64,000 nt of DNA from Octopus sinensis (Eukaryota): NCBI RefSeq assembly GCF_006345805.1, contig NC_043020.1:10292001-10356000 (forward strand), given 5' to 3'. Position numbers and translations under genes: made by a program. The notes under the pieces were generated by a model. It was not told the origin of the DNA, did not search any database, and worked only from the letters and a program-made list of their open reading frames with translations. Of this stretch, positions 4,535-56,026 are shown in pieces. Positions within the stretch are counted from its first letter, which is position 1. Every line of letters starts with the position of its first letter.

Positions 4535-5000
4535 TCACGTACGTACATACATACATGCATACATACATACATACATGCATACGTACATACATACATACAT
4601 ACATACATACGTACGTACATACATACATACATACATACATACACACACACATACATACATACACACACACACACATACACACACACACATACATACACAC
4701 ACATACATACATACATACATACATACATACACACACACATACATACATACATACATACATACACACACACATACATACATACATACATACATACACACAC
4801 ACACATACATACAACATACATACATACACACACACAACACAATACACTACGTACGTACACACACACATACATACATACATACATACATACACACACACAT
4901 ACATACATACATACATACACACACACATACTACACACATACATACACATACATACATACATACATACATACATACATACATACATACATACTACACCATA
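4535..5000. repeat. (TACA)n/(CA)n compound microsatellite
   Basis: Direct reading. Confidence 0.97.
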
Positions 5001-5347
5001 CATAAAATATTGTTACCAGTTCAAATATGCTTGGAGGTATAAGATATATTCGATCCCGTGGGCTCAAAACGTCAAAGACTTTTCCATTCTTCCCGAGCGT
5101 TAAGCTAATACACCTCCTTGTTCTTCCTCCACCTGTCTTCGTCTCTTGTTTCCAATAAATCTGGACTAATATGTATGTATGTGTGCGTGTATGTATGTAT
5201 GTATGTATGTATGTATGTATGTATGTATGTATGTATGTGTGTGTGTATGTATGTACGTATGTATGTATTACGTATGTAGGTAGGTAGGTTTGTGTGTGTG
5301 TGTGTGTGTGAGGAGAGAGAGAGAGAGCGAGAGAAATAGGACATACC

Positions 5348-5885
5348 TATTTGTTTACTACCCACAAGGGGCTAAACACAGAGGGGACAAACAAGGACAG
5401 ACAAACAAGGACAGTGCGTAACTGGTACTTATTTAATCGACCCCAAAAGGATGAAAGGCAAAGTCGACCTCGGCGGAATTTGAACCCAGAACGTAGCGGC
5501 AGACGAAATACCTATTTCTTTACTACCCACAAGGGGCAAAACACAGAGAGGACAAACAAGGACAGACAAACGGACTTAGTCAAATATATCGACCCCAGTG
5601 CGTAACTGGTACTTATTTAATCGACCCCGAAAGGATAAAATGTTTTCTTATTACCCACAAGGGGCTAAACATAGAGAGGACAAACAAAGACAGACAAACG
5701 AATTAAGTCGATTATATCGACCCGAGTGAGTAACTGGTACTTATTTAATCGACCCCGAAAGGATAAAAGACAAAGACAAAGCCAAAGCCAACCTGGGCGG
5801 TATTTGAACTCAGAACGTAACGGCAGACGAAATACGGCTACGCATTTCGCCCGGCGTGCTAACGTTTCTGCCAGCTCGCCGCCTT
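5348..5885 (-). mobile_element. SINE-C array (three tails, one head)
   Basis: Head AAGGCGGCGAGCTGGCAGAAACG..GAGTTCAAAT, tail GCCCCTTGTGGGTARTAAAGAAATA. Flanking repeat GAGAGAAAT(A/C)GGACATACC. Confidence 0.85.
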
Positions 5886-6347
5886 AGAGAGAGAGAGAGA
5901 AATCGGACATACCTACCCATCGATCATCCGTCGTTATCCAATACTTGCTACGGAATGAACGTAAGGTGAAACTTTGCTTCTATCGTTTATACTTCGGCTA
6001 CTGCTACTTCTGTCTTTATTGCTGTTGTTATCATTAATCACGGGTTTTGATTGTCTCTCCGCCACCCAACAAACCGACCAGCCCGACCATCAGCTGACGT
6101 TCGAACTATTTCCTAATTGCGATGACAGTTGGAATAATCCTTCCTCCACCCACAACCATCTCTGTGGCGTCGGTTACTCCGGCTCTCTGTCTCTCTGTCT
6201 CTCTTTGTCTCTCCTTCAGTGTTTATATTGTTCACAGTGGCCATAAAAAACATCCATCAAATCGTTTCTTTTGTGAAGTATTTTGACTAAAACGGTGCGA
6301 GGTGAAATAATTATCGGCCGTGAAAGTTTTCCGTAGGAAATTACCTC

Positions 6348-6387
<40 letters not shown>

Positions 6388-6617
6388 CCTCTCTTTGTAG
6401 AAAAGGAGAAAGCAAAGTCTTCAGTGTGAGTATGTGGTTTGCGGGGTCAACTACGTCCTCCGCTTCATTTTTGTTAATCACTCATTCTCATATAATTGTA
6501 TATATTTTTAATTGTTTGTTTTTCATACGTTTCGTCTCATTCGATACCCTGACCCCCAACGTTTGTTTTGTCCCCTCTTTTTCTCAACCTTATGGTGAAT
6601 AAAGAATACTCTCTCTC

Positions 6618-6667
<50 letters not shown>

Positions 6668-6720
6668 TTCTCTCCTCTCTCTCTCTCCTCTCTCTCTCGA
6701 TAACTCGCTATCTATCCACT

Positions 6721-6868
6721 CTTATTCTATTACTCGTTTCAGTCATTTCACTGTGGCCCTGCTGGAGCACCGCCTTTAAGTCGAACAAATCGACCCCAGG
6801 ACGTATTCTTTATAAGGCTAGTACTTATTCTATCGGTTCTTTTGCTGAACCGCTAAGTTACAGGGACG
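6721..6868 (-). mobile_element. SINE-B 3' fragment
   Basis: Family consensus 3' part, abutting the foldback element. Confidence 0.75.
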
Positions 6869-8640
6869 GAGATGAAAATACTTCTTCCGTTTAGGGCATT
6901 ATTCCCTAGGTTTCTAAAGTTTTTTTTTTTTAAAATCATACTTTATTTAAAGAATTCCTATCATTTGCGTATGAATATATATAATAATAATGAAATTATT
7001 GTATACAGTGCTCAGGTGCACCACAACTTGTCAGAAAGTGCATATAAAGTACATGCAGTAGTGTAGAAATGTCTGGGAAGCGAACAATGTATGAGTCAGA
7101 TACATGCTTGTGTGTGTATGGAGGGGAGAAAATCAGGTGTAGTGTTGGCGAATCTCAGAAAGCATGGAAGTTTTGAAGGATGCAGTGCTCCGACAACTAA
7201 CAACTGATGCCGGCAGTTTGTTCCATGCTTCAGCAACTCTTAGCGTGAAAAAATGTTTCCGAAAGTCATGGGAGCTGTGCTGTTTTCTGACTTTGTAAAT
7301 ATGTCCACGGGTGTTAGACGGGTGGAGTTTTTAATAATAATAAAATAATGAAATTATTGTATACAGTGCTCAGGTGCACCACAACTTGTCAGAAAGTGCA
7401 TATAAAGTAATGCAGTAATGTACAAATGTCTGGGAAGCGAACAATGTATGAGTCAGATACATGTTTGTGTGTGTATGGAGGGGAGAAAATCAGGTGTAGT
7501 GTTGGCGAATCTCAGAAAGCATGGAAGTTTTGAAGGATGCAGTGCTCCGACAACTAACAACTGATGCCGGCAGTTTGTTCCATGCTTCAGCAACTCTTAG
7601 CGTGAAAAAATGTTTCCGAAAGTCATGGGAGCTGTGCTGTTTTCTGACTTTGTAATATGTCCCGGGTGTTAGACGGGTGGAGTTTTTAAATAATAATAAT
7701 AATAATGAATTATTGTATACAGTGCTCAGGTCACCACAACTTGTCAGAAAGTGCATATAAAGTACATGCAGTAATGTAGAAATGTCTGAAAGCGAACAAT
7801 GTATGATCAGATACATGCTTGTTGTGTGTATGGAGGGGAGAAAATCAGGTGTAGTGTTGGCGAATCTCAGGAAGCATGGAAGTTTTGAAGGATGCAGTGC
7901 TCCGACAACTAACAACTGGGCCGGCATCATTATTTTTAATGATAAAAGATAATTAGAAGAATCAATTTATTGGACGGGGTCGAATAAATATCATCAAATA
8001 AATGGAACAAATTTTGATCCTTATATGAATTATGTATTTGTTTAAACCAGACAGCTGTTTTTGTTGCAAAAACCCATATTTAGGGTATACAATTGAAGAA
8101 TATGAATTTCAACAAAAGTAATACACATAATTATATTATATTATTTGGGACTCATTGTGAGCGAAAGGAAGAAAACATAAATTAGTTAGAAAAGGAAATT
8201 AATATAAAATGATCGCAAAAATGAAAACTAATGATACAAAATCTAAATATTTAAATTAGTTAGAAAAGGAAATTAACATAAAATGATCGCAAAAATGAAA
8301 ACTAATGATATGAAATCTAAATATTTAAATATTATCCACGGATGAGTTACAGATAACATATAATTATGTGTATTACTTTTGTTGAAATGCCTATTCTTCA
8401 ATTGTATACCCTAAATATGGGTTTTTGCAACAAAAACAGCTGTCTGGTTAAATTAAATGCACAATTCATATTAGCGTAAAAACTTGTTCCATTTATTTGA
8501 TTATAATTATTATTATAATTATTTTTTAATCATATATATTCATACGCAAATGAAAAGAATTCCTTAAATAAGGTATGATAGGAAAAAATACCCTGGAAAC
8601 CTAGAGAATAATGCCCTAAACGAAAGAAATATTTTCCTCT
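6869..8640. mobile_element. Foldback element with long inverted arms
   Basis: 6869-6980 is inverted to ~8535-8640, and ~7985-8150 is inverted to ~8355-8510. A central ~75-bp direct repeat lies at 8180-8330. The CR1 array sits in the left arm. Confidence 0.75.
6981..7926 (-). mobile_element. Tandem array (2.7 units, ~355 bp) of a CR1-clade LINE 3' end
   Basis: RKHFFTLRVAEAWNKLPASVVSCRSTASFK (CR1 ORF2 C-terminus) + 3'UTR + (ATT)n tail. Units 6981-7334, 7335-7689, 7690-7926. Confidence 0.88.
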
Positions 8641-8664
8641 GAAATATATATATATATATATATA

Positions 8665-8996
8665 AAAGACCCCCTTCGGTCATGAATGACCATGGGATTG
8701 CACCTAGAAAGTTACCCTCCTAGACACAAGTCTGGGCAAGGTTGTTTTTATGGAAGGCCAGCAGTCGCCCATCGCATACCAGCCTCCCTCCACGCCACCA
8801 GTGTTATCCAAGGGAAAGACAAAGGGCCGATACAGCTTGGCACCAGTGACGTCGCAACTAATTTCTAAAGCTGAGTGAACTGGAGCAACGTGAAATAAGT
8901 GCTTTGCTCGAGAACACAACACGCAGCCCGGTCCGGGATTCGAGCTCACAACCTCACGATCGTAAGCTCGACGCTCTAACCACTGAGCCATGCGCC

Positions 8997-8998
<2 letters not shown>
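8665..8998 (-). mobile_element. SINE-F: E-type head and CORE-like segment with a different tail
   Basis: GAAGGCGCATGGCTCAGTGG..TTTCACGTTGCTCCAGTTCACTCAGCT, then an unrelated tail ending GACCGAAGGGGGTCTTT. Confidence 0.75.
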
Positions 8999-9092
<94 letters not shown>

Positions 9093-9151
9093 CATATACA
9101 TATAATATATATATATATATATATATGATATATAATATATATATATATATG

Positions 9152-9345
9152 CAGAGGTACATGAAGCCCAGTTACAACAACAGCCGGCTATTACCAGTAA
9201 AGGTCTTAGTTCCCATTTTTATACAAGACATCGTAGATCTTTAGCTGGGCTAAAAAGTCACATTCGATCACAGCACCAGTAACGTTAAGCTTCATGCAAT
9301 GGCCAAAATCGATAACGAGGGGGCAGCCATAATATATATATGTAT
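9152..9345 (+). mobile_element. RTE LINE 3' terminal fragment
   Basis: SLAGLKSHIRSQHQ* (C2H2 end), then CGAGGGGGCAGCCAT and a (TA)n tail. Confidence 0.65.
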
Positions 9346-9374
9346 ATATAATATATTATCTATATATATATATA

Positions 9375-9844
9375 CGAGCAAAACGCCCCCGTCCAATGGA
9401 CGGTGCTGAGTTGTCAAACTTTAAACCAATTTTCTCAAAACGACTTGTCCGGCCCGTCCCATAAGGCCTCCCCTTTGAGAAACACTGATTTTACCTAAAT
9501 TTGAGACACCAGCAAAAGAAGAAATAGACTTTTTTCCTATTCCAAAGAAAAATGATTTTAATCACACAAATATGCAACCGAAGAGTTTAAAGTAGCAGTG
9601 AGTACATCGCAATTCTGATGTACTTGCGCGTACAAATGCACGTTCCCACGGCTTTATCGATCGCATTCTCACCTGGAATCGATTTTTGTAATTTTTTCAA
9701 GACTTATACACGCCCTGATACCGTCAGTATCTACATATCAAATTTGAGCGCAATCGGATGGAAGATGCCCGAGGTCCTAAAAGACACACCACACACACAA
9801 CCACCACACACACACAGAACGGATTTTATATTATATATATATAG
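9375..9844 (-). mobile_element. Non-autonomous Helitron (diverged)
   Basis: Minus strand: CTATATATATAATATAAAATCCG..(TG)n 5' region, 3' hairpin CCGTCCATTGGACGG, then ..TTTTGCTCG|T. Confidence 0.6.
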
Positions 9845-19596: not shown

Positions 19597-20015
19597 AGAA
19601 GGCGGCGAGCTGGCAGAAACGTTAGCACGCCGGGCGAAATGCCTAGCGGTATATCGTCTGTCGCTACGTTCTGAGTTCAAATTCCGCCGAGGTCGACTTT
19701 GCCTTTCATCCTTTCGGGGTCGATTAACTAAGTACCAGTTACGCACTGGGGTCGATGTAATCGACTTAATCCGTTTGTCTGTCATTGTTTGTCCCCTCTG
19801 TGTTTAGCCCCTTGTGGGTAATAAAGAAATAGGTATTTCGTCTGTCGTTACGTTCTGAGTTCAAATTCCGCCGAGGACGACTTTGCCTTTCATCCTTTCG
19901 GGGTCGATTAAATAAGTACCAGTTATGCACTGGGGTCGATGTAATCGACTTAATCCCCTTGTCTGTCCTTGTTTGTCCCCTCTGTGTTTAGCCCCCTGTG
20001 GGCAATAAAGAAATA
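19597..20015 (+). mobile_element. SINE-C dimeric array
   Basis: Internal junction AAATA|GGTATTTCG at 19832. TSD AATATCTGGAATG. Confidence 0.9.
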
Positions 20016-20028
20016 AATATCTGGAATG

Positions 20029-20351
20029 TGAAGGCGCGTGGCTTAGTGGTTAAGGGGCATTCGACTCATGAACGTAAGGTCGTGAGTTCAATTCCCGGCG
20101 GCGCGTTGTGTCCTTGAGCAAGACACTTTATTTCACGTTGCTCCAGTCCACTCAGCTGGCAAAAATGAGAAGTACCTGTATTTCAAAGGGCCAGCTTTGT
20201 TGCACACTGGGTCACGCTGAATCTCCCCGAGAACTACGTTAAGGGTACACGTGTTTGTGGAGTGCTCAGTCGCTTGCACGTTAATTTCACGAGCAAGCTG
20301 TACCGTTCATCGTATCAGCTGGGACCCTCGTCGTCGCAACCGACGGAGTGG
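20029..20351 (+). mobile_element. SINE-E: tRNA head + CORE-like segment + SINE-A 3' half
   Basis: GGCGCGTGGCTTAGTGG..GAGTTCAATTCCC, then GTGTCCTTGAGCAAGACAC..GCTCCAGTCCACTCAGCT, then TACCTGTATTTCAAAGGGCC.. shared with A. Confidence 0.8.
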
Positions 20352-20414
20352 TCCTATCGGGAATGACACAACTTGACTTGGTTGCTAGGCGATGATGGTT
20401 TCACTTCTCTATGC

Positions 20415-20602
20415 CACACACACACACACACACACACAAACACGCACGCACACACACAAACACAGACACAAACACGCACACACACACACACAAACACAGA
20501 CACACACACACGCACACACACGCAAACACGCACACACAGACACACACAAACACAGACACACACACAAAAACGCGCCGCACAAACACGCGCTCACACACAC
20601 AG

Positions 20603-20634
<32 letters not shown>

Positions 20635-20661
20635 ACACAGACACACACGCACGCACACACA

Positions 20662-20699
<38 letters not shown>

Positions 20700-20700
20700 C
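20415..20700. repeat. (CA)n-rich microsatellite
   Basis: Direct reading. Confidence 0.95.
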
Positions 20701-20859
20701 ATACGCGCTCACTCAGAAACATGTATGCGGAAGCGGATGAGAAGAGAGGAAGAGATGGAAGGAGAGAGAGAAACATTACAATTTATGAACTGAATGCGAT
20801 TGACGTCAATATTTTCTCTCTCTCCTCGAAAACTGACATAAAAATATGCTCACTCACAT

Positions 20860-20863
20860 AAAC

Positions 20864-20912
<49 letters not shown>

Positions 20913-22345
20913 GGAAGACAGAAGAGAGAAAGGGGGAGAGAAGGGGAGAGAGTGAGAGAGGATGAGAGAGAGAGGGAGGGGCGGGACCCGAAAGACAGAG
21001 GGGGTTAGAGGGGAGGGGGCGGAAGACAGATGGGAGAGGGGCGACGCCAGGTGAAGAAGGGTGGGGAGCTTTGGGTGAGTGGTGTGAGAGAGAGAGGGAG
21101 GGGTGGGCGCGGAAGACAGTTGGGTGAGAGGGTGAGAGAAGGGTGAGAGACGAGAGAGGGAGCGGGGGATTGGGAAGACAAAGGGGTGTTAGAGGGTTGA
21201 GAGAATGGTGAGTTGAGAAGGGTGAGAGTGAGAGCGGAGGGAGGGGGCGGAAGACAGGATGGGAGGGGGGTGAGAGAATGGTGAGAGAAGGATGAGAGAG
21301 AGAGGGAGGCGGAGGAGGGAGACAGAGGGTGGTGAGTGAGAGGGGGAGGAGGGCGGAAGCAGAGGGACGGGAAAGGGCGGGGGAGAGAAGGGTGAGTGGG
21401 TGAGAGCGAGAGGGAGGGTGGGCGGAGGAAGACAGGGGTGAGAGGGTGAGAGAAGGTGAGAGAGAGAGGGAGGGGGCGGAGGTGGAAGACAAGGGGTGGT
21501 AGAGGGTGGAGAGGGAAAATGGTGAGAGGCCTGAGAGAAGGGTGGTTGTGAGAGAGAGAGGGAGGGGGCGGAAAAGACGATGGGAGAGAGGGTGAGGTGA
21601 GAGAATGGTGAGAGAAGGATGCGAGAGAGAGGGAGGGGGCGGAAGACAGAGGGGCGGGTGAGAGGGTGAGAGAATGGTGAGGAGAGAGAGGAGGGGGCGG
21701 AAGACAGAAGGGTGAGAGAGGGTGAGAGAATGGTGAGGGAAGGGTGAGGAGGAGAGAGGGAGGGGGCGGAAGAGAGAGGGAGAGGGCCGAGAAGGGAGTG
21801 AGAAGCGGAGAGAGGGGGAGAGAGGGTGAGAGAGAGAGAGAGGGAGGGGGCGGAAGACAAGAGGGGAGAGAGAGAGGGTGAGAGATGGTGAGAGAGAGGG
21901 AGGGGGCGGAAGACAGATGGGAGAGAGGGTGAGAGGAGGGTGAGAGATGGAGTGGGGTGAGAGAGAGAGGGAAGGGGGGACGGAAGACAGGGGTGAGGGG
22001 TGAGAGATGAGAAGGGTGAGAGAGAGAGGGAGGGGCGGGAGACAAAGGGGTGAGAGGGTGAGAGAATGGTGAGAGAAGGTGTGAGAGAGAGAGGGAGGGG
22101 GTCGGAAGACAGATGGGAGAGAGGTGAGAGAGGAGAGAGGGAGGGGGAGGGATGGGAAAAAGACAGATGGAGAGAGGAGAGGGTGAGAGAATGGTGAGAG
22201 AAGGGTGAGAGAGAGAGGGAGGGGGCGGAAGACAGATGGGAGAGAGGGTGAGAGAATGGTGAGAGAAGGGTGAGAGAGAGAGGGGGAGGGGGCGGAAGAC
22301 AGATGGGAGAGAGGGGGAGAGAAGGGGGAGAGAGAGAAGGGGGAG
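20860..22345. repeat. Purine-rich minisatellite, ~55-65-bp unit GAGAGAGAGGGAGGGGGCGGAAGACAGATGGGAGAGAGGGTGAGAGAATGGT
   Basis: About 25 imperfect units, followed by GA-rich repeats to ~22820. Confidence 0.95.
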
Positions 22346-23194
22346 AGAAAAACATTACAATTTATTGACTGAACACGATTGGCATAAGTGTCTTCCCTTC
22401 CCCTCATACACATAAACACAGAGGAAAGTGAGAGAGAATGGAGAGAGTAGGAGGAGGAGGAGGAGAGAGAGAGAGAAAAAGGGAGAGAGAGAGAGGGGAA
22501 AAGAATACGAGAGAGAGAAAGAGACAACGAGAGAGAAAGAGAATGGAAGAGAGAGAGAGAAAGAGAGAGAAAGAAAGAACATGAGATCGAGAAGGAAAAA
22601 GAACACGAGAGAGAGAAAGAGAAAACGAGAGAGAAAGAGGATGGAAGAGAGAGAGAGAGAGAGAAAGAGAGAGAAAGAAAGAACACGAGATTGAGAAGGA
22701 GAAAGAATACGAGAGAGAGAAAGAGAATACGGGAGAGAGAGAGAAGGGGGGAATAAAATATGAGAGAGAAAGCGAAAGCAAATTCGAGAGAGAGAGATGT
22801 GGGGAAAGGATAGAGGGAGGGAAAGAATTAAAGGAACACTAAAACGTCCAATGTCAAATAGGGTAGCATCAAATCAGCGAGGCAAAATAAGTGGCGGCAG
22901 AACGGCTGCGCCCGAATGTCTCACACCCTTATCTAGCTACCCATCTGGGTTACTAATCTGTACTATAGCTGGGATAGTCAAACTTTCTCTTTTCTGCGAG
23001 AAAGTACTTCAGATGCAAGCAGATGTTACAAATACAACCTATTTTAGGGTACTATTTCTATATCTTCATTTGGCACCAACGTCGCTTCCGAAACCAGATC
23101 AGAACTTAGTTTTGGAAGTGTCGTTTCAAAGAATAGGTTACTCGATATCAAACAATCTTCAGCGCATGTAATTATCGCAGTAAATTATATGAAA

Positions 23195-23589
23195 CTAGCA
23201 GTATCGCCCGGCGTTGCTCGGGTTTGTAAGGGAAATAACTATAAAGCATTTTTAGAGAGTTATAGCCAAAAAATAGCAAAAAATGCATTAAAAATGGAAA
23301 AAAAATTATAGCAAATTTTTTTTTAATCGTTGACTCATCGTAGACATTTTAGAGAGTTCTTCCCTTATATAATAGCAAAAAATGCATTAAAATGGAAAAA
23401 AATGATGGTAAATTATTTTTTAAATCGTAGACTCATCGTAGACGCGCGCTAATACCCAGAAGAGGTCGATAGAATCACGACTATAAGATACCCGGTTTTG
23501 GTTAAACTGCACCGCAAAATGTGGGAGTAGTTAGGAATCTAAATCGTAGGAGACAGACACTCACACAACTTCACTTTTATATATAAAGA
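23195..23589 (-). mobile_element. Helitron H1 with ~95-bp internal duplication
   Basis: Same TC/CTAG ends and hairpin as 17269. The segment TTAGAGAGTT..CATCGTAGAC is repeated. Confidence 0.9.
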
Positions 23590-23755
23590 TTAATTATAAC
23601 TATAATCCATGTAATACTGTTTCGGATACGCCCCATCCTCGCCTCAGAAGCGAAATCAGAACATATCTGTTTTATCCATCCCAGAGGCTTGAAAAGCAAA
23701 GTCAACTTAAGTCGGCCAATCTACAGTTCTTCTAAAAACTTAATATTTAATATAA

Positions 23756-23969
23756 GAGCAGGCGTGGCCGTGTGGTAAGAAGCTTGCTTCCCAACCACAT
23801 AGTTCCTTGTTCAGTCCCACTGTGTGGCACCTTGTGACACCTTGCGCATGTGTCTTCTACTATAGCCTCGGACCGACCAAAACCTTGTGAGGGATTTGGT
23901 AGACGGAAACTGAAAGAAGCTTATCGTGTATATATATATATATGTGTGTGTGTGTATGCGTGTGTGAGT

Positions 23970-24008
<39 letters not shown>

Positions 24009-26980: not shown

Positions 26981-27158
26981 GACCACTCGCTTTCTAAAAA
27001 CTGCCGCATTACTCCACCAGTAGTTGCAATTCTAGCATGCAATTCAACTTCCCGCCTTCCATCTTTCTACGAGATGATATTATAAACACCAAATTTAGCA
27101 GCAGCCACTGACGTCGTGTGTAACCTTCAGTAAGGTCACCGGTATGGACTTCCATTTT

Positions 27159-27184
27159 AGCCCCTTGTGGGTAGTAAAGAAATA
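27159..27184 (+). mobile_element. 26-nt SINE-C tail-only insertion
   Basis: AGCCCCTTGTGGGTAGTAAAGAAATA between perfect 18-bp repeats GGTATGGACTTCCATTTT. Confidence 0.85.

Positions 27185-28729: not shown

Positions 28730-28730
<1 letters not shown>
28125..28730 (-). mobile_element. SINE-C cluster with an alternative tail (C2: GGCCTTGTGCCTATAGCAGA) and a standard-tail unit joined at GGTAT
   Basis: 28125-28323 is a C2 copy. 28338-28730 is a standard-tail unit followed at 28499-28504 by the rest of a C2-tailed unit. Confidence 0.8.
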
Positions 28731-28875
<145 letters not shown>

Positions 28876-28900: not shown

Positions 28901-29104
28901 TGCCGGGCGAAATGCGTAGCCGTATTTCGTCTGCCGTTACGTTCTGAGTTCAAATCCCGCCCAGGTCGACTTTGCCTTTCATCCTTTCGGGGTCGATAAA
29001 TTAAGAACCAGTTACACACTAGGGTCGGTGTTATCGACTTAATCCGTGTGTCTGTCTTTGTTTGTCCTCTCTGTGTTTAGCCCCTTGTGGGTAGTAAAGA
29101 AATA
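28901..29104 (+). mobile_element. SINE-C, 5'-truncated
   Basis: Family consensus to the AAAGAAATA tail. Confidence 0.85.
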
Positions 29105-32637: not shown

Positions 32638-33406
32638 TGTGAAATGGCCTTAACCTAAATTGTTATCACATCTGGCAAGACTGATAACAAAAATATATAA
32701 AAACAACAAAAATTTGCTTAAAAGTTTTAAGATAACTGATTTTAAAAAATTGAGGTTTATATTAACACTAGCATTAAAGACCCGTCGTTGCCGGGTCATA
32801 GTGCTAGTGCATGTATATATGTGTATATATATGTGTACATATTACATGTACATCTATATATATACATCTACACATAAAATACAAAATATAAAGTTATATC
32901 TTGATATCGCTAGTGATAACAATACTCAAAATATATAACAGACTGGAATTGTTAGCCCATCTCTTGTAATTTCGATCAATTGTATCTTGTCCTCCCTCTT
33001 GTATAGAAGTGTGGCTACAATCCAGCCTACCTCTACTTCTGGGGGTGGGGGTGGCATTTTTAATTTTCTTCCGGGACATCCTACATCCCAGATATAAAGG
33101 TAAAAATAAAATATTTCCACTTGGCAAGTTTGAGTCGAGTACTCCCTTGCACGCTCCGTTGACTCGAACCTTGCTTCTATTGTGGCGAATTTACCACCTC
33201 TGATTAGATACCTTTCATAGTCGCACCAAGACACTTTTCAAAGGTGCTTTCCTTCATGTTATTTCTTTATTACCCACCAGGGGCTACGAAGAATGGCGGA
33301 CATAACAAAACATGGGGGACATAGAACAATATGATTAAATTTATGAGCAAATGAAAATGAAAAAATGATAATATGAAAGCGATGCTAACGGCCCCCTCCG
33401 CCAGCA

Positions 33407-34501
33407 TCACTTACCTGTCCTTTTGTTTTCACTGTCACCTGAATGTTCATTCCCAATATTAAGACCATCCATATCCATTCTTACTCCGAAACTGTCCTCC
33501 ATATATTCCACGAATTCATCGCTCATTCTTGTATCTTTCACCTCCCAGTTCTCCCTTTCACACCTCAACACAAACTCATCTATATTCTTCTTTTCCAGCA
33601 CTGCATATCTGGTCCCATCCATTTCATACCATTCATACTCCTCCATTACCCTTTCAACCTCTTTCTGTTCAGTCACAATATAAATGTTCGGCCTGGGTTC
33701 ATTTTCAAACTCTTGTCTGTCTGTATTGTTATTTTTTTTTTGTTTTCTTGTTGGAGGGGAGCGGGTGGGTTCACTGTCTGCAGGGGAAGGGTGGGATTCA
33801 GAGGGTGCGGGTGGTGTTGGGGTGGGTTGGGGCTTCGCACAGTTTTTCTTTTTTTCCTTTTCTCTTTTTTCTTCCTTCTTCCACTCTTGTTGCATCTCCT
33901 CTTCTTCTGTCGTTTCTTTTTCCCTTTGGTTCTCTTTGGTTTCTTCCTCTTTTGGGGCTTCCGCGACGATTTCCTTTTCTTTTTCCTTTAGTGGGGGAGG
34001 GCAGTAGGCTCTTATGTGACCCCTCAGGCCACACTTGTAGCACCTGGGCGCCCTACCCTCCACCCACACTCTCATAATAATATTTCCAGTTTTTATACTG
34101 TCCGTAAGCTTTTCTATAACTTCCGCCTCCGTCTGTATGTTCATTACTAGTGTGGCACCTCTCACGCCTTCATATTTCATAATGGCGTGGAGGATGTCCA
34201 CTTTATCTTCATTTCCTTTGATAACCGCAGCCGTTATTAATTCGCCCTCTAGGTGTGGAGGTATTCCTTCCACCCTAATTCTGGTGGTCCTTCTATTCAA
34301 ATACGAGGGGAACAAGTAAAACTTTTCTGTACTCACCACCTTGGCTGCTATATTCCTGGCTGCTTTCTCACTTTTAAATTGTACCGTTATGGTTCCATAT
34401 TCTAATCCTTTTGTCATGTACACAATTTCTTCTCCTGTCCGTTTGAAAGCCTCTTCAATTGCTTCCATGTTAATCACTTCCATTTTTCTACCTCCATTCA
34501 T
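33407..34501 (-). CDS. Gag-like ORF1p of a non-LTR retroelement (L1/Tx1-like): RRM-like region, CCHC zinc knuckle, charged Pro-rich C-terminus
   Basis: 364 open codons. CYKCGLRGHIRAYC = CX2CX4HX4C, preceded by VEGRAPR. RIRVEGIPP resembles ORF1p RRM strands. Clade assignment is inference. Confidence 0.8.
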   Translation of the reverse strand: MNGGRKMEVINMEAIEEAFKRTGEEIVYMTKGLEYGTITVQFKSEKAARNIAAKVVSTEKFYLFPSYLNRRTTRIRVEGIPPHLEGELITAAVIKGNEDKVDILHAIMKYEGVRGATLVMNIQTEAEVIEKLTDSIKTGNIIMRVWVEGRAPRCYKCGLRGHIRAYCPPPLKEKEKEIVAEAPKEEETKENQREKETTEEEEMQQEWKKEEKREKEKKKNCAKPQPTPTPPAPSESHPSPADSEPTRSPPTRKQKKNNNTDRQEFENEPRPNIYIVTEQKEVERVMEEYEWYEMDGTRYAVLEKKNIDEFVLRCERENWEVKDTRMSDEFVEYMEDSFGVRMDMDGLNIGNEHSGDSENKRTGK

Positions 34502-34767
34502 AAATACTTTATATTAATGGTTCTACGATGGAACCAGTCTCCGCGCCCTGCTAGAGGCAACAGCTCAACCTCTCCGTTCTCCTCCTCCTTCATGAACTCC
34601 TGGAAGTCCGTCAACTTAGCCAGGTCTATCTCTTTTTCTGTTGACTTCTTCGTTATACCTGCATAGGTGCTTTCCATTTTTTTCACCGCCAACTCCTCCT
34701 CAGATGTCGACGAATTTTCAGAGAAATTTCTCCCTTCCATCTCATCCATTTGGTAGAGGCGGCTCAT
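34498..34767 (-). CDS. Probable N-terminal part of the same ORF1p (MSRLYQ..STYAGITKK..), in a different frame
   Basis: Its TGA overlaps the downstream ATG (TT-ATGA-ATG). STYAxxxKK resembles ORF1p N-termini. Confidence 0.55.
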   Translation of the reverse strand: MSRLYQMDEMEGRNFSENSSTSEEELAVKKMESTYAGITKKSTEKEIDLAKLTDFQEFMKEEENGEVELLPLAGRGDWFHRRTINIKYL

Positions 34768-35655
34768 AGTCGCCTCAGACCGAAAAACAGCCTCCCGAAC
34801 AGAAAACGTGCGACGCACAGAACCAGTGCGACGCGAAACCGCACCAACCGACGTTCCAATTCCGCAACCACAATTCACTTTTTGTTCTTTTTTCTTTTTT
34901 AACCGAATTTTACAGAGTGCAAAAAAACGCGACCTTTTTTCTCTACATTGTATACTTTATAGACAATAGTCTTTTCTTTAATTTAATTTTTTATTATCCA
35001 TCTGGACTATTCCATTTCTACACGCTAATTTTATTTTTAATTTATTCCCATTCATGTGAAACCACTTATTCAAGTTCAAGTCATTGATGCAATTTTATAC
35101 CAATTGATAGTTTTACTTTTGTTATGTTACGATTATATTATACTTTAGTTTGATTTTAATTATTACTTACTACATATAATTCAATTGTTATTATTATTTT
35201 TATTGTTAAAGTGAAAGTATCTGACATAAAATAGAGAAATGTTTTTGTTTCACTTTTAACACGTAATACTGAAATAGTGGAGAAGATATGATATTGCTAT
35301 GGGCTCGCTCTAGGCAAGAAGTTGAACATTTTTTTTTAGCTGATGACACTCCCCGGACCCTAAGTAAGGCAAGTGTAAAATTTAATGAAATTGGTTGTGT
35401 AGTTCTCAAGTTTTAGGGAAACACACAGACAGACAGACAGACACACATTCTCAGTTTTATATATGTAAAGATTGCTAAAAGTGCTCAGAACAGACAAGTA
35501 ATTTATTTGGTGAAAAAGCAGTCCTTTTTAGGAGAATGTTGCTTACTTTGTTAAGGGAGGGGTCTAGAAAATGGGACATGAAAGTCATCTGTTCATTTAA
35601 TGTGGGTTGGCAGCCTGTGGTTGATAGCAATTCATTATAGCAGGACAAATAATTG

Positions 35656-43683: not shown

Positions 43684-44075
43684 GTATTGTAGTACAAGTA
43701 GAAAGACACATTTTTCAACATGTAAGTACTGGGAGAACAGCATATACAGAATAAAATCCTTACAGAGCAGAAAAATCTGTCAGCAACCAACCATGAGACT
43801 TGAACTCACATCCCTTTAATTTCCATATGACAAAATTTCTATTCCAACTAGCATTTCTAGATGAGTTTATAAGTTCTAGAATTGCAGGAGAATTTGTCAG
43901 TTAAGTAGCTTAGCTTAATGGTAAAGCGCTTTGACTGGAAATTAAAGGGATGTGAGTTTGAGTCTCGTGGCGGGTTGCTGACAGATTTTTCTGCTTTGTA
44001 AGGACTTTATCTTATATAAGCTGTTCTATCAGTAATTACGTGTTGAAAAATATATCTTTCTACTTGTAATATATA
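43684..44075. mobile_element. Foldback element with tRNA-derived sequence in its arms
   Basis: ~140-bp inverted arms (43684-43825 / 43935-44075). The right side reads TAGCTTAATGGTAAAGCG..CTGGAAA..GAGTTTGAGTCTC (A box, anticodon arm, B box). Confidence 0.7.
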
Positions 44076-44886: not shown

Positions 44887-45118
44887 AAGGAAGCGAGCTG
44901 GCACAATCGTTAGCATGCCGGGCATAATGCTTTACAGTATTTTGTCTGCCGTTACGTTCTGAGTTCAAATTCCGCCGAGGTCCACTTTGCCTTTCATCCT
45001 TCTGGGTCGATAAATTAAGTACCAGTTACGCACTGGGGTCGATGTAATCGACTTAATACCTATGTCTGTCCTTGTTTGTCCCCTCTATGTTTAGCCCCTT
45101 GTGGGTAATAATGAAATA
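44887..45118 (+). mobile_element. SINE-C
   Basis: Family consensus. Confidence 0.88.
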
Positions 45119-55263: not shown

Positions 55264-55495
55264 GCGGCGAGCTGGCAGAAACGTTAGCACGCCGGGCGAA
55301 ATGCGTGGCCGTATTTCGTCTGTCGTTACATTCTGAGTTCAAATTCCGCCAAGGTCGACTTTGCCTTTCATCCTTTCGGGGTCGATAAATTAAGTACCAG
55401 TTTCGCACTGGGGTCGATGTAATCGACTTAATTCCTTTGTCTGTCTTTGTTTGTCCCCTCTATGTTTAGCCCCTTGTGGGTAGTAAAGAAATAGG
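55264..55495 (+). mobile_element. SINE-C
   Basis: TSD TATTGGATCTTTGGCG (55251-55266, 55496-55511). Confidence 0.9.
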
Positions 55496-55522: not shown

Positions 55523-55609
<87 letters not shown>

Positions 55610-55620
55610 TATATGTATAT

Positions 55621-56026
55621 CTGGCAGAAACGTTAGCACGCCGGGCAAAATGCTTAGCGGTATTTCGTTTGCTGCTACGTTCTGAGTTCAAATTCCGCCG
55701 AGGTCGACTTTGCCTTTCATCCTTTCGGGGTCGATAAATTAAGTACCAGCTACGCACTGGGGTCGATGTAATCGACTTAATACCTATGTCTGTCCTTGTT
55801 TGTCCCCTCTGTGTTTAGCACTTTGTGGGTAATAAAGAAATAGGTATTTCGTTTGCCGCTACGTTCTGAGTTCAAATTCCGCCGAGGTTGACTTTGCCTT
55901 TCATCCTTTCGGGGTCGATAAATTAAGTACCAGTTACGCACTGGGGTCAATGTAATCGACTTAATACCTATGTCTGTCCTTGTTTGTCCCCTCTATGTTT
56001 AGCTCCTTGTGGGTAATAAAGAAATA
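55621..56026 (+). mobile_element. SINE-C dimeric array
   Basis: Junction AAATA|GGTATTTCG at 55843. Confidence 0.88.

What the first reader, a model, noticed from the sequence alone, without database searches (positions are those of the whole stretch)
33259..34885. ORF1-only (Gag-like) retroelement sharing its 3' tail with SINE-C
Seen: an open 364-codon ORF with a CCHC knuckle, a ~150-nt 3'UTR and no ORF2. Its last 27 nt (TAGCCCCTGGTGGGTAATAAAGAAATA) match the SINE-C tail at 26/27. Known: SINEs borrow the 3' tail of the LINE that mobilises them, and ORF1-only half-LINEs exist (HAL1 from L1). Inference: a three-part system of autonomous L1/Tx1-like LINE, ORF1-only helper and SINE-C. The ORF1 may be kept under selection, since nearly every other TE ORF here is shattered.
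Basis: partly seen in the sequence, partly recalled or inferred. Interest (0 to 1): 0.85.

Follow-up and report, generated by a model that had tools for sequence, protein, structure and literature searches.

The report
Octopus ORF1-only LINE derivative inside a Helitron
This is a slightly broken copy of an octopus "half-LINE", a mobile element that keeps only the RNA-binding gene of a LINE plus the 3' end it shares with that LINE and an abundant SINE. It sits as cargo inside a Helitron transposon, which makes it a good new example of a known kind of genomic parasite rather than a new kind.

Summary
There is a 364-codon ORF with one CCHC knuckle, a 147-nt 3'UTR and no ORF2. The 27-nt tail occurs 14 times in the window where 0 are expected.

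Corrections:
- The ORF is the larger piece of a 453-codon ORF, split by a 1-nt deletion near 34514.
- The element runs 33260-34934.
- The tail shared with SINE-C is about 47 nt, not 27.

Eleven Octopus vulgaris and O. sinensis loci show that this is a family trait, not a one-off deletion. More than 25 ORF1-only units fall into two lineages (A and C). Several have target-site duplications (TSDs) or 5' truncation. dN/dS among A-type copies is about 0.25.

Full LINEs with endonuclease (APE), reverse transcriptase and zf-RVT domains carry the same tail, and their ORF1 is 30-46% identical to these ORFs. None lies in the window.

New findings:
- The window copy lies inside a non-autonomous Helitron (32768-35471). 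The same composite sits at another locus.
- Other copies of this Helitron hold head-to-tail arrays of ORF1-only units and LINEs.
- A covarying 17-bp hairpin spans the stop codon.

Verdict: a HAL1/HeT-A-like non-autonomous LINE derivative. The three-part system is supported, a "helper" role is unproven, and this copy is dead.

The parts
33260..34934 (-). ORF1-only non-LTR retroelement, A-type copy (5'UTR, frameshifted ORF1, hairpin, 3'UTR, tail)
   Evidence: Array units in L006 start at the position matching window 34934-34937 and end at the tail. Nucleotide identity is 97.7% to L007, 96.5% to L004, 94% to L006d, 72% to L003 and L005, and 67% to L001.
34768..34934 (-). 5'UTR. Compared with L004 and L006 it has a 10-bp deletion at its very start, a deletion shared with L007.
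   Evidence: Alignments of 5' ends and junctions.
34498..34767 (-). ORF1 segment 1: 89 codons from the ATG (MSRLYQ...), ending at a premature TGA created by the frameshift
   Evidence: The reading frame is continuous in L004 (453 codons) and in L006b.
34514..34515 (-). Frameshift site: one A missing from TTAAAT
   Evidence: Window ACCATTAATATAAAG against ACCATTAAATATAAAG in L004 and in two L006 units.
33407..34501 (-).
   Evidence: Homologues are found only in Octopus. It is 35-40% identical to the ORF1 of RT-encoding LINEs by tblastn, and 39-41% over the RRM-like-2 plus knuckle stretch.
34052..34294 (-). Better-predicted RRM-like domain (residues 70-150 of the 364-aa ORF). A weaker RRM-like unit lies at residues 12-55 (34337-34468).
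   Evidence: AlphaFold2 gives pLDDT 76-87 over residues 70-150 (beta-alpha-beta-beta-alpha-beta-beta). The top Foldseek hits are tandem-RRM proteins at E 6e-4 to 1e-2 with low TM-scores.
34001..34042 (-). CCHC zinc knuckle CYKCGLRGHIRAYC
   Evidence: Read directly from the sequence. Pfam zf-CCHC scores E 0.059 here and 1.9e-5 in a C-type copy. A profile search against PDB hits retroviral nucleocapsid knuckles at E 2e-4. C154, C157, H162 and C167 are invariant or nearly so.
33410..33700 (-). C-terminal domain of ORF1 (about 97 aa, TEQKEV...QRTGK)
   Evidence: Repeated in P0001 and P0003-P0005. dN/dS is about 0.6. Other subfamilies carry a different C-terminal domain (L006b, L001, C-type).
33375..33415 (-). 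Conserved 17-bp RNA hairpin with a 6-nt G-rich loop. Its 5' arm contains the GTAAGT motif and the TGA stop, which overlaps an ATG as UGAUG.
   Evidence: RNAfold gives about -24 kcal/mol. Across 13 copies (9 distinct), 98% of cells pair, 5 pairs show compensatory changes, 0 of 500 shuffles reach the observed values, and slid controls drop to 33-58% paired.
33260..33406 (-). 3'UTR of 147 nt. Only its last ~65 nt are homologous to the LINE 3'UTR.
   Evidence: Multiple alignment of A-type, C-type and LINE 3'UTRs.
33260..33313 (-). 3' tail module shared with SINE-C, C-type units and the RT-LINE. The 27-nt core is 33260-33286 and includes a small GCCC/GGGU hairpin and an AATAAA.
   Evidence: Local alignment scores are 45-65 against a shuffle maximum of 23-28. 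The 4-bp stem is invariant and the centre of the loop varies, so there is no covariation to judge by.
32768..35471 (-). Non-autonomous Helitron that contains the element: 5' TC, a 3' hairpin, and a 3' CTAG
   Evidence: The same ends occur in L004 and L006-L011 with unrelated flanks. Every left junction read is A|TC and all five right junctions are CTAG|T.
34935..35471 (-). Helitron 5' arm (537 nt)
   Evidence: 85-98% identical in seven other loci.
32768..33259 (-). Helitron 3' arm. It begins with ACATGAAGGAAAGC (33246-33259), has the hairpin GACCCGGCAACGACGGGTC at 32779-32797, and ends in CTAG at 32768-32771.
   Evidence: In the arrays of L004, L006, L008 and L010, copies of the first 5-14 nt follow unit tails at most junctions, like TSDs.
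55264..55493 (+). Full-length SINE-C copy (230 nt) with a TSD, used as the reference for the shared tail
   Evidence: Other SINE-C tails end at 5348, 5513, 5641, 19831, 20015, 28505, 29104, 38314, 45118, 54433, 55842 and 56026.
27158..27184 (+). Solo 27-nt tail flanked by the 17-nt TSD GGTATGGACTTCCATTT, an extremely 5'-truncated insertion

Best explanation
Window 33260-34934 (minus strand) is a dead copy of an Octopus family of non-autonomous non-LTR retrotransposons derived from an L1-type LINE.

What the family keeps from the LINE:
- The whole ORF1: two RRM-like folds, one CCHC knuckle, a charged and proline-rich linker, and a C-terminal domain.
- The ORF1-stop/ORF2-start overlap, now UGAUG.
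- The LINE's last ~65 nt.

It has lost the APE and RT of ORF2, and it has gained a family-specific 17-bp hairpin over the stop codon.

Inferred mechanism: the RNA is translated into ORF1p, which coats it. ORF2p made by the autonomous LINE recognises the shared 3' module and copies the RNA into the genome by target-primed reverse transcription. SINE-C uses the same 47-nt module. That gives LINE, ORF1-only elements (A and C lineages) and SINE as three tiers on one reverse transcriptase.

Shown: the homology, the lack of ORF2 in many copies, the shared tail, TSDs and 5' truncation in family members, purifying selection between subfamilies, and the hairpin covariation.

Inferred: trans-mobilisation and tail recognition.

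This particular copy carries a 1-nt frameshift and has no TSD of its own. It lies inside a non-autonomous Helitron, and the same Helitron+A composite occurs at a second locus. It therefore most likely arrived by Helitron transposition.
For: Family trait:
- A-type units with ORF, 3'UTR and tail but no ORF2 occur in L001, L003, L004, L005, L006 (x4) and L007. L002 holds two 5'-truncated copies.
- C-type units occur in L003, L004 (x2), L006, L008 (x8), L009 (x2), L010 (x4) and L011.

Derivation from a LINE:
- A-type ORF against LINE ORF1 is 38-46% identical over the second RRM-like domain plus knuckle. A, C and LINE form three separate groups.
- AGGTAAGT(A/G)ATG at the ORF end matches the LINE ORF1/ORF2 junction.
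- The 3'UTRs are homologous only over the last ~65 nt.

Partner LINE:
- Exo_endo_phos, RVT_1 and zf-RVT domains.
- The closest solved structure is human L1 ORF2p at E 4e-51, against R2 at 1e-24.
- The same tail is present in L002, L004, L006, L009 and L011.

Retrotransposition hallmarks:
- 19-bp TSDs CAGAAACGTTAGCACGCCG in L001 and L003.
- A 12-bp TSD around the truncated dimer in L002.
- A solo tail with a TSD in the window.

Selection: dN/dS is 0.23-0.34 overall and 0.11-0.23 in the N-terminal domain. Intact ORFs occur in L001, L005 and L006b, and L004 is nearly intact.

Hairpin.

Helitron.
Against: - No experiment or expression data were available, so trans-mobilisation and tail recognition are inferences.
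- Loci were reached through annotated proteins of two assemblies, so the sample is small and biased. Eight of the twelve loci (counting the window) lie in the same Helitron family. Much of the copy number could therefore come from Helitron transposition, or from array expansion by unequal crossing-over, rather than retrotransposition.
- Arrays contain chimeric and deleted units (L006 U7 and U8), so ORF2-less forms can arise repeatedly.
- dS between subfamilies is partly saturated.
- The RRM assignment rests on a model with mean pLDDT 56.6 and weak Foldseek scores.
- Pfam does not reach its threshold on the window protein.
- The window copy itself shows no TSD.
Confidence: 0.78

Rival explanations
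1. The ORF1-only units are not a self-propagating retroelement family. They are by-products of recombination, template switching or deletion inside LINE arrays, and they are multiplied mainly by Helitron transposition and unequal crossing-over.
For: - Eight of twelve sampled loci lie in one Helitron family.
- The window and L007 carry the same Helitron+A composite at different sites.
- L008 has eight C-type units at a 1.78-kb period.
- L006 has chimeric units that join a LINE 5' half to a C-type 3' end.
Against: - Copies outside the Helitron have their own TSDs: L001 and L003 inside a SINE head, and the 5'-truncated dimer in L002.
- The A and C lineages each share one junction architecture across 54-95% (A) and 75-84% (C) protein identity, with dN/dS about 0.25 among A-type copies. 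This points to long propagation as ORF1-only units.
Confidence: 0.13
2. The window copy is a one-off internal deletion of a full LINE.
For: The ORF end retains the ORF1/ORF2 junction motif, so a deletion did happen once in the family's history.
Against: The same ORF-hairpin-3'UTR-tail junction is present in at least 13 copies down to 67% identity, in two species.
Confidence: 0.03
3. The tail is an independent SINE-C fragment inserted next to an unrelated ORF.
For: A solo 27-nt tail with its own TSD does exist in the window at 27158.
Against: - No TSD brackets the 27-mer at 33260-33286.
- The tail and upstream 3'UTR are conserved in every paralogue.
- The 20 nt upstream (GTCCGCCATTCTTCG) resemble the tail of the L002 LINE (GTCCCCGTCTTCG), not SINE-C (GTCCCCTCTGTGTT).
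Confidence: 0.02
4. It is a domesticated gag-like host gene.
For: There is a long ORF, dN/dS is below 1, and the gene models P0002 and P0006 are annotated as 'uncharacterized protein'.
Against: It is multicopy, has frameshifts in most copies, shows TSDs, forms arrays, lies inside a Helitron, and is found only in Octopus.
Confidence: 0.03

Closest known systems
HAL1 (half-L1) of mammals (from my own knowledge, Bao & Jurka 2010; papers listed mention HAL1 but I did not read them)
   Same: It is a non-autonomous derivative of an L1-type LINE that keeps ORF1 and the 3' end, lacks ORF2, and amplifies as its own family.
   Different: HAL1 ends in poly(A) and relies on L1's relaxed 3' recognition. 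Here the 3' end is a specific ~47-65-nt module with no poly(A), shared with a SINE. There are two ORF1-only lineages, a covarying hairpin over the stop codon, head-to-tail arrays and Helitron carriage.
HeT-A / TART / TAHRE of Drosophila telomeres (my own knowledge)
   Same: A gag-only element that depends on a related RT-encoding element. Mixed head-to-tail arrays of gag-only and full elements.
   Different: Those belong to the Jockey clade, are poly(A)-tailed, sit at telomeres and serve a host function. Here the clade is L1-type, the arrays lie at internal sites of a Helitron or in SINE heads, and there is no sign of a host role.
Stringent LINE/SINE tail pairs (Ohshima & Okada 'common tail' concept, cited in PMC9115989)
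   Same: SINE-C and the LINE share a 47-nt 3' end containing a small conserved stem-loop. 5'-truncated copies and TSDs are present.
   Different: A third, protein-coding tier of ORF1-only elements uses the same tail. Recognition of the tail has not been tested.
Tx1L inside Tx1D of Xenopus (my own knowledge); 'L1-Tx1' families are reported in O. vulgaris (PMC13282606)
   Same: An L1/Tx1-group LINE found repeatedly at a fixed site inside a DNA transposon.
   Different: The host element here is a Helitron. At least two sites in it are used, insertions also occur elsewhere, and placement in the Tx1 clade was not tested.
Type I ORF1p, RRM plus CCHC (Khazina & Weichenrieder classification; my own knowledge)
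   Same: One CCHC knuckle follows the RRM-like fold(s).
   Different: The RRM is only modelled, with moderate confidence. A long charged linker and a swappable C-terminal domain follow the knuckle.

Membership tests
ORF1-only (half-LINE) non-autonomous non-LTR retrotransposon | The ORF is homologous to the ORF1 of an autonomous LINE | tested here: met
   tblastn gives 35-40% identity to the LINE ORF1 in L002 and L004, and 38-46% over RRM-like-2 plus knuckle. The overall architecture is the same.
ORF1-only (half-LINE) non-autonomous non-LTR retrotransposon | ORF2 (APE/RT) is absent in many independent copies, not just in one | tested here: met
   More than 25 units in 11 loci lack ORF2. No APE or RT is found in the window at E<=1.
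ORF1-only (half-LINE) non-autonomous non-LTR retrotransposon | The 3' end is shared with the autonomous partner | tested here: met
   The last ~65 nt align with the LINE 3'UTRs. The tail is present on LINEs in L002, L004, L006, L009 and L011.
ORF1-only (half-LINE) non-autonomous non-LTR retrotransposon | Hallmarks of target-primed reverse transcription: TSDs and 5' truncation | tested here: met
   Met for family members: 19-bp TSDs in L001 and L003, and a 12-bp TSD around the truncated dimer in L002. Not met for the window copy itself, which has no TSD.
ORF1-only (half-LINE) non-autonomous non-LTR retrotransposon | Mobilised in trans by the partner's ORF2p | not testable with these tools
   This needs a retrotransposition assay or polymorphism data.
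L1 group of LINEs (partner element) | An APE endonuclease, an RT and a C-terminal zinc-binding domain in ORF2, plus a separate ORF1 | tested here: met
   Pfam finds Exo_endo_phos, RVT_1 and zf-RVT. Human L1 ORF2p is the best solved relative at E 4e-51. ORF1 lies upstream.
Tx1 clade specifically | Placement with Tx1 reference RTs in a phylogeny | not tested
   No reference LINE set was available. Database hits carried no clade names. 'L1-Tx1' families are reported for O. vulgaris, which is only a lead.
Type I ORF1p (RRM + CCHC) | CCHC zinc knuckle | tested here: met
   CX2CX4HX4C is conserved in all copies. The PDB profile search hits nucleocapsid knuckles. Pfam zf-CCHC is below its cut-off here (E 0.059) and above it in a C-type copy.
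Type I ORF1p (RRM + CCHC) | RRM fold upstream of the knuckle | tested here: inconclusive
   In the AlphaFold2 model, residues 70-150 have pLDDT 76-87 with RRM-like topology. The best Foldseek hits are tandem-RRM proteins, but at E of only 6e-4 to 1e-2 and TM below 0.25. There is no sequence-level hit to L1 ORF1p.
SINE/LINE pair with a common 3' tail | The SINE's 3' end is homologous to the LINE's 3' end beyond chance | tested here: met
   47-48 nt align, scoring 45-65 against a shuffle maximum of 23-28. There are 14 tails in the window where 0 are expected.
Helitron (carrier of the window copy) | 5' TC, 3' CTRR, a GC-rich hairpin about 11 nt before the 3' end, insertion between A and T, and no TSD | tested here: met
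   TCTTTATATA...GACCCGGCAACGACGGGTCTTTAATGCTAG. Every left junction read is A|TC and all five right junctions are CTAG|T, with unrelated flanks.
Helitron (carrier of the window copy) | A Rep/helicase gene (autonomous form) | tested here: not met
   The arms are 537 and 492 nt with no such ORF. It is a non-autonomous Helitron.
HeT-A/TART-type telomeric array | Jockey-clade elements at chromosome ends | tested here: not met
   The partner is L1-type. The sampled loci are internal to chromosomes (record coordinates). The resemblance is functional only.

The most novel reading that the evidence does not exclude
The LINE, two ORF1-only lineages and SINE-C could form a tail-directed community. In it, new cDNAs are laid down immediately 3' of an existing tail, or RT jumps from one tailed RNA to the next. 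This would build mixed head-to-tail arrays, which a Helitron then spreads. The ORF1-only elements would be maintained because they supply ORF1p (and a structured stop-codon hairpin) that the community, including the protein-less SINE-C, needs. That would make them a true 'helper' tier rather than a plain parasite.
Probability: 0.15. Interest if true: 0.75.

Novelty: new member of a known kind. Interest (0 to 1): 0.5.

Why it matters
SINEs make up about 11.6% of the O. vulgaris genome and LINEs about 12.9% (PMC13282606), and the SINE partners are largely unassigned. This locus does three things.

- It links one abundant octopus SINE to an L1-type LINE through a 47-nt tail.
- It shows a protein-coding middle tier (ORF1-only elements under purifying selection) using the same tail.
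- It shows that a Helitron carries these units around.

Together these give a tractable system outside mammals and flies for three questions: whether ORF1p is needed in cis, how RT recognises a specific 3' module, and how head-to-tail LINE arrays arise.

There is also a warning for annotators. O. vulgaris gene models P0003-P0005 start inside this element and appear to splice from its GTAAGT motif into unrelated downstream sequence.

Tried and rejected
- Pfam on the window ORFs gave only a sub-threshold zf-CCHC.
- A profile search of PDB sequences found only zinc knuckles and no L1 ORF1p.
- The homologue search with the LINE RT returned unnamed metagenome and Argonauta proteins, so no clade name was obtained.
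- Rfam and ARAGORN did not recognise the SINE-C head as tRNA. The only tRNA-like hit is elsewhere, at 43911-43968.
- RNAalifold on the tail found an invariant 4-bp stem with no covariation, which argues neither for nor against a structure.
- I looked for a TSD around the window copy. ACAATGTAGAGAAAAAAG against ACATGAAGGAAAG is not convincing, so I rejected it.
- At first I took the SINE-like 'head' in front of the L001 and L003 copies to be part of the element. It is the target SINE, duplicated as a 19-bp TSD.
- At first I took L004 to be the orthologous locus with an 8.6-kb insertion. The flanks outside 35471 and 32768 differ, and the shared block is a Helitron, so these are paralogous Helitron copies.
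- Literature searches found no description of ORF1-only LINE derivatives in cephalopods.
- No other Pfam domain was found in the window's large ORFs.
Full report
**1. What is in the window**

The feature lies on the minus strand.
- ORF 33407..34501(-) has 364 codons and contains the knuckle CYKCGLRGHIRAYC.
- After the stop comes 147 nt of 3'UTR, ending in TAGCCCCTGGTGGGTAATAAAGAAATA (33260-33286).
- This 27-mer matches 14 sites in the window at up to 3 mismatches, where 0 are expected.
- No endonuclease or reverse transcriptase similar to the partner LINE is detectable anywhere in the window, even at E<=1.

**2. Corrections to the anatomy**

- An 89-codon ORF (ATG at 34767) ends in a TGA that overlaps the ATG of the 364-codon ORF.
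- In the closest copies, L004 (O. vulgaris OX597830) and two units of L006, the two parts form one reading frame. In L004 it is 453 codons, running ...RRTIKYKVFMNGGRKMEV....
- The window lacks one A at about 34514-34515. The 'open' ORF is the larger piece of a frameshifted ORF1.
- Array units in L006 begin at the position matching window 34934-34937, directly after the preceding tail. The element therefore spans 33260-34934.

**3. It is a family, not a one-off deletion**

Protein searches hit only Octopus proteins. From these I fetched 11 loci from O. vulgaris and O. sinensis.

A-type units have ORF, hairpin, 3'UTR and tail, with no ORF2. Nucleotide identity to the window copy:

| Locus | Identity to window |
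|---|---|
| L007 | 97.7% |
| L004 | 96.5% |
| L006, four units | 94%, 89%, 75%, 73% |
| L003 | 72% |
| L005 | 72% |
| L001 | 67% |
| L002, two tandem 5'-truncated copies | 85-86% |

A second ORF1-only lineage, C-type, has the same layout but a different C-terminal domain. It occurs in L003, L004 (x2), L006, L008 (eight tandem units of 1.78 kb), L009, L010 and L011.

State of the A-type ORFs:
- Intact in L001 (384 aa), L005 (about 469 aa) and L006b.
- Nearly intact in L004.
- Most other copies have one frameshift.

**4. The partner LINE exists, outside the window**

Full elements lie in L002 (minus strand, 9582..4580), L004 (13694-18896), L006, L009, L010 and L011 (the L010 copy runs off the end of the fetched locus). 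In L008 only the 5' start of a LINE is seen before the fetched sequence ends.
- Their order is ORF1 (RRM-like plus CCHC), then APE, then RT, then a zinc-binding C-terminus. Pfam finds Exo_endo_phos, RVT_1 and zf-RVT.
- The best solved relative of the RT is human L1 ORF2p, at E 4e-51 against 1e-24 for R2.
- Where the 3' end is visible (L002, L004, L006, L009, L011), the LINEs end in the same tail, for example TGGCCCCTTGTGGGTAATAAAGAAATA in L002.
- Over the second RRM-like domain plus knuckle, A-type against LINE is 38-46% identical, C-type against LINE 30-40%, and A-type against C-type 32-42%.
- Identity within each group is 54-95% (A), 75-84% (C) and 58% (LINE).
- The two ORF1-only lineages are therefore old and distinct from the sampled LINE ORF1s.

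**5. Where the deletion is**

- The A-type ORF ends ...ACA GGT AAG TGA TGC.
- LINE copies have AAAGGTAAGTAATGG at the ORF1/ORF2 junction, where UAAUG overlaps the ORF2 start (M-D-Y-I-Y-V-G-C-L-N).
- The A family thus keeps the ORF1 stop and ORF2 start overlap, as UGAUG.
- The 3'UTRs of A-type, C-type and LINE align only over their last ~65 nt.
- The SINE-C match is 47-48 nt, scoring 45-65 against a shuffle maximum of 23-28.
- In the window copy, the 20 nt in front of the 27-mer resemble the tail variant of the L002 LINE rather than SINE-C, and no TSD brackets the 27-mer.

Together with its conservation in all paralogues, this rejects the idea that the tail is a stray SINE-C fragment.

**6. Evidence for retrotransposition of ORF1-only units**

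- In L001 and L003, A-type elements sit at the same position in the head of another SINE. That SINE has its own TSDs and a different tail.
- There they are flanked by a 19-bp duplication, CAGAAACGTTAGCACGCCG. L003 has a second, C-type, unit at the same site with a third copy of the duplication.
- In L002, two 5'-truncated A-type units are flanked by one 12-bp TSD, GTATGTGTACAT.
- In the window, a 27-nt solo tail has a 17-nt TSD at 27158.

**7. Selection**

- Nei-Gojobori dN/dS between A-type copies is 0.23-0.34 overall. It is 0.11-0.23 in the N-terminal domains, 0.2-0.55 in the linker and about 0.6 in the C-terminal domain. dS is saturated for the deepest pairs.
- Since all A-type copies share the same post-ORF junction, this divergence accumulated while the lineage was already ORF1-only.
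- Selection is thus a property of the family. The window copy itself is frameshifted.

**8. Protein**

- AlphaFold2 on a shallow alignment gave mean pLDDT 56.6, but 76-87 for residues 70-150, with beta-alpha-beta-beta-alpha-beta-beta topology. A weaker similar unit lies at residues 12-55.
- The top Foldseek hits are tandem-RRM proteins (SFPQ/NONO, IMP3 RRM12, hnRNP H, nucleolin, UP1), at E 6e-4 to 1e-2 and low TM.
- This fits a Type I ORF1p (RRM plus CCHC) but is not proof.

**9. A conserved RNA hairpin**

- From GG UAAGUGAUGCUGGCGG through the loop AGGGGG to CCGUUAGCAUCGCUU UC (33415..33375), RNAfold predicts a 17-bp stem at about -24 kcal/mol.
- In 13 copies (9 distinct), 98% of cells pair and 5 pairs show compensatory changes.
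- 0 of 500 shuffles reach the observed values, and slid controls fall to 33-58% paired.
- The splice-donor-like GTAAGT and the stop codon lie in its 5' arm.
- Its function is unknown. Candidates are an ORF2p or ORF1p recognition element, masking of the GTAAGT motif, or control of termination at the stop.

**10. Context: a Helitron**

- Homology between the window and L004, L006, L007, L008, L009, L010 and L011 begins at window 35471. In the loci where the right end was recovered (L004, L007, L009, L011) it stops at 32768. The flanks beyond are unrelated.
- The block starts with TC after a host A at every left junction read.
- It ends GACCCGGCAACGACGGGTC-TTTAATG-CTAG before a host T at all five right junctions. 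Several insertions are in (TA)n.
- This is the Helitron signature. With arms of 537 and 492 nt and no Rep/helicase gene, it is non-autonomous.
- L007 has the same Helitron+A composite as the window, including the same 10-bp deletion at the element's 5' end, at a different genomic site.
- The window copy therefore most likely arrived by Helitron transposition, which explains why it has no TSD.

**11. Arrays in other Helitron copies**

- Other copies of the Helitron hold arrays at the same internal site:
  - A-C-C-LINE in L004.
  - A-A-A-LINE-A-C plus deleted and chimeric LINEs in L006.
  - C x8 followed by the start of a LINE in L008.
  - C x4 and a LINE in L010.
- At most junctions in these arrays the tail is followed by a copy of the first 5-14 nt of the right arm (ACATG...ACATGGAGGAAAGC). 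Some A-A junctions in L006 join tail to the next unit directly.
- L009 and L011 use a second site about 300 nt further on, with ATTCCAGTCTGTTATA duplicated.
- New units are repeatedly placed immediately 3' of an existing tail.
- SINE-C dimers in the window are a full copy plus a 5'-truncated copy inside a single TSD, e.g. 19602-20015. They fit RT template switching between tailed RNAs.
- Which process builds the arrays is inference. The candidates are repeated nicking next to a tail, template jumping and unequal crossing-over.

**12. Comparison and novelty**

- The architecture is that of a half-LINE such as HAL1. The dependence on a related RT element and the mixed head-to-tail arrays recall HeT-A/TART/TAHRE. 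The common tail is the classical stringent SINE/LINE arrangement. Residence at a fixed site of a DNA transposon recalls Tx1L in Tx1D. The first, second and fourth comparisons are from my own knowledge.
- Papers on octopus repeats report RTE, Dong-R4, CR1 and L1-Tx1 LINEs and mostly unclassified SINEs. They describe no ORF1-only elements.
- I rate it a new member of a known kind with interesting extras: two lineages, a specific tail, a covarying hairpin and Helitron carriage.
- Interest is 0.5.

Noticed in passing
window 32768-35471 (-): A non-autonomous Helitron (5' TC, 3' hairpin plus CTAG, A|T target) encloses the element. Copies of the same Helitron elsewhere carry arrays of ORF1-only units and full LINEs at one or two fixed internal sites.
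   Followed up: yes
window 33375-33415 (-): A 17-bp RNA hairpin spans the ORF's stop codon and the GTAAGT motif, with compensatory changes across copies. Its function is unknown. C-type and LINE 3'UTRs also have hairpins with GGGG-containing loops (CCACTCGATTTCGGGGATCGAGTGG; GCTCGTGGGGTCCGAGC), which I did not test.
   Followed up: partly
window 19602-20015 (+); also 55617-56026 (+) and 5348-5880 (-): SINE-C dimers and trimers consist of a full copy followed by copies that start at the internal GGTATTTCG. The 19602-20015 dimer is flanked by a single 19-nt TSD (AATATCTGGAATGNGAAGG), as expected from RT template switching.
   Followed up: partly
window 27158-27184 (+): A solo 27-nt tail is flanked by the 17-nt TSD GGTATGGACTTCCATTT. 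Most solitary SINE-C TSDs also begin with GGTAT, which suggests a target preference.
   Followed up: partly
L001 9420-11300; L003 8585-12520: A second SINE family has a SINE-C-like head but a different tail (...CCTTGTGCCTAGAGTAGAAAAG). Its head is hit at the same position by ORF1-only elements in two independent copies, with the 19-bp TSD CAGAAACGTTAGCACGCCG.
   Followed up: partly
L006 16860-21061: The arrays contain deleted and chimeric units. One has only a LINE ORF1 N-terminus plus tail (about 1 kb). Another joins LINE ORF1+APE to a C-type C-terminal domain and tail. L006 4914-6578 is an A-type unit with a different, intact C-terminal domain, so the domains are modular.
   Followed up: partly
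L003, L004, L005 (gene models P0003, P0004, P0005): O. vulgaris gene models start inside the A-type C-terminal domain and appear to splice from the GTAAGT at its stop codon into unrelated downstream exons, one of them HAUS1-like. They are probably chimeric annotation artefacts or TE-initiated transcripts.
   Followed up: no
window 43911-43968 (+): This is the only Rfam hit in the window at gathering score: a tRNA-like sequence (34.1 bits) that ARAGORN does not call. It may be the head of another SINE.
   Followed up: no
window 20001-24000: A block with high GC (0.56), very strong GC and AT skew, and long overlapping ORFs (610 aa at 20854-22686) that have no Pfam match. It looks like low-complexity or satellite sequence.
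   Followed up: no
window ~28730-28850, ~28975-29080, ~44990-45060 and ~55540-55610: Long microsatellites, (ATG/CAT)n, (TACA)n and (CA)n, directly abut SINE-C copies.
   Followed up: no
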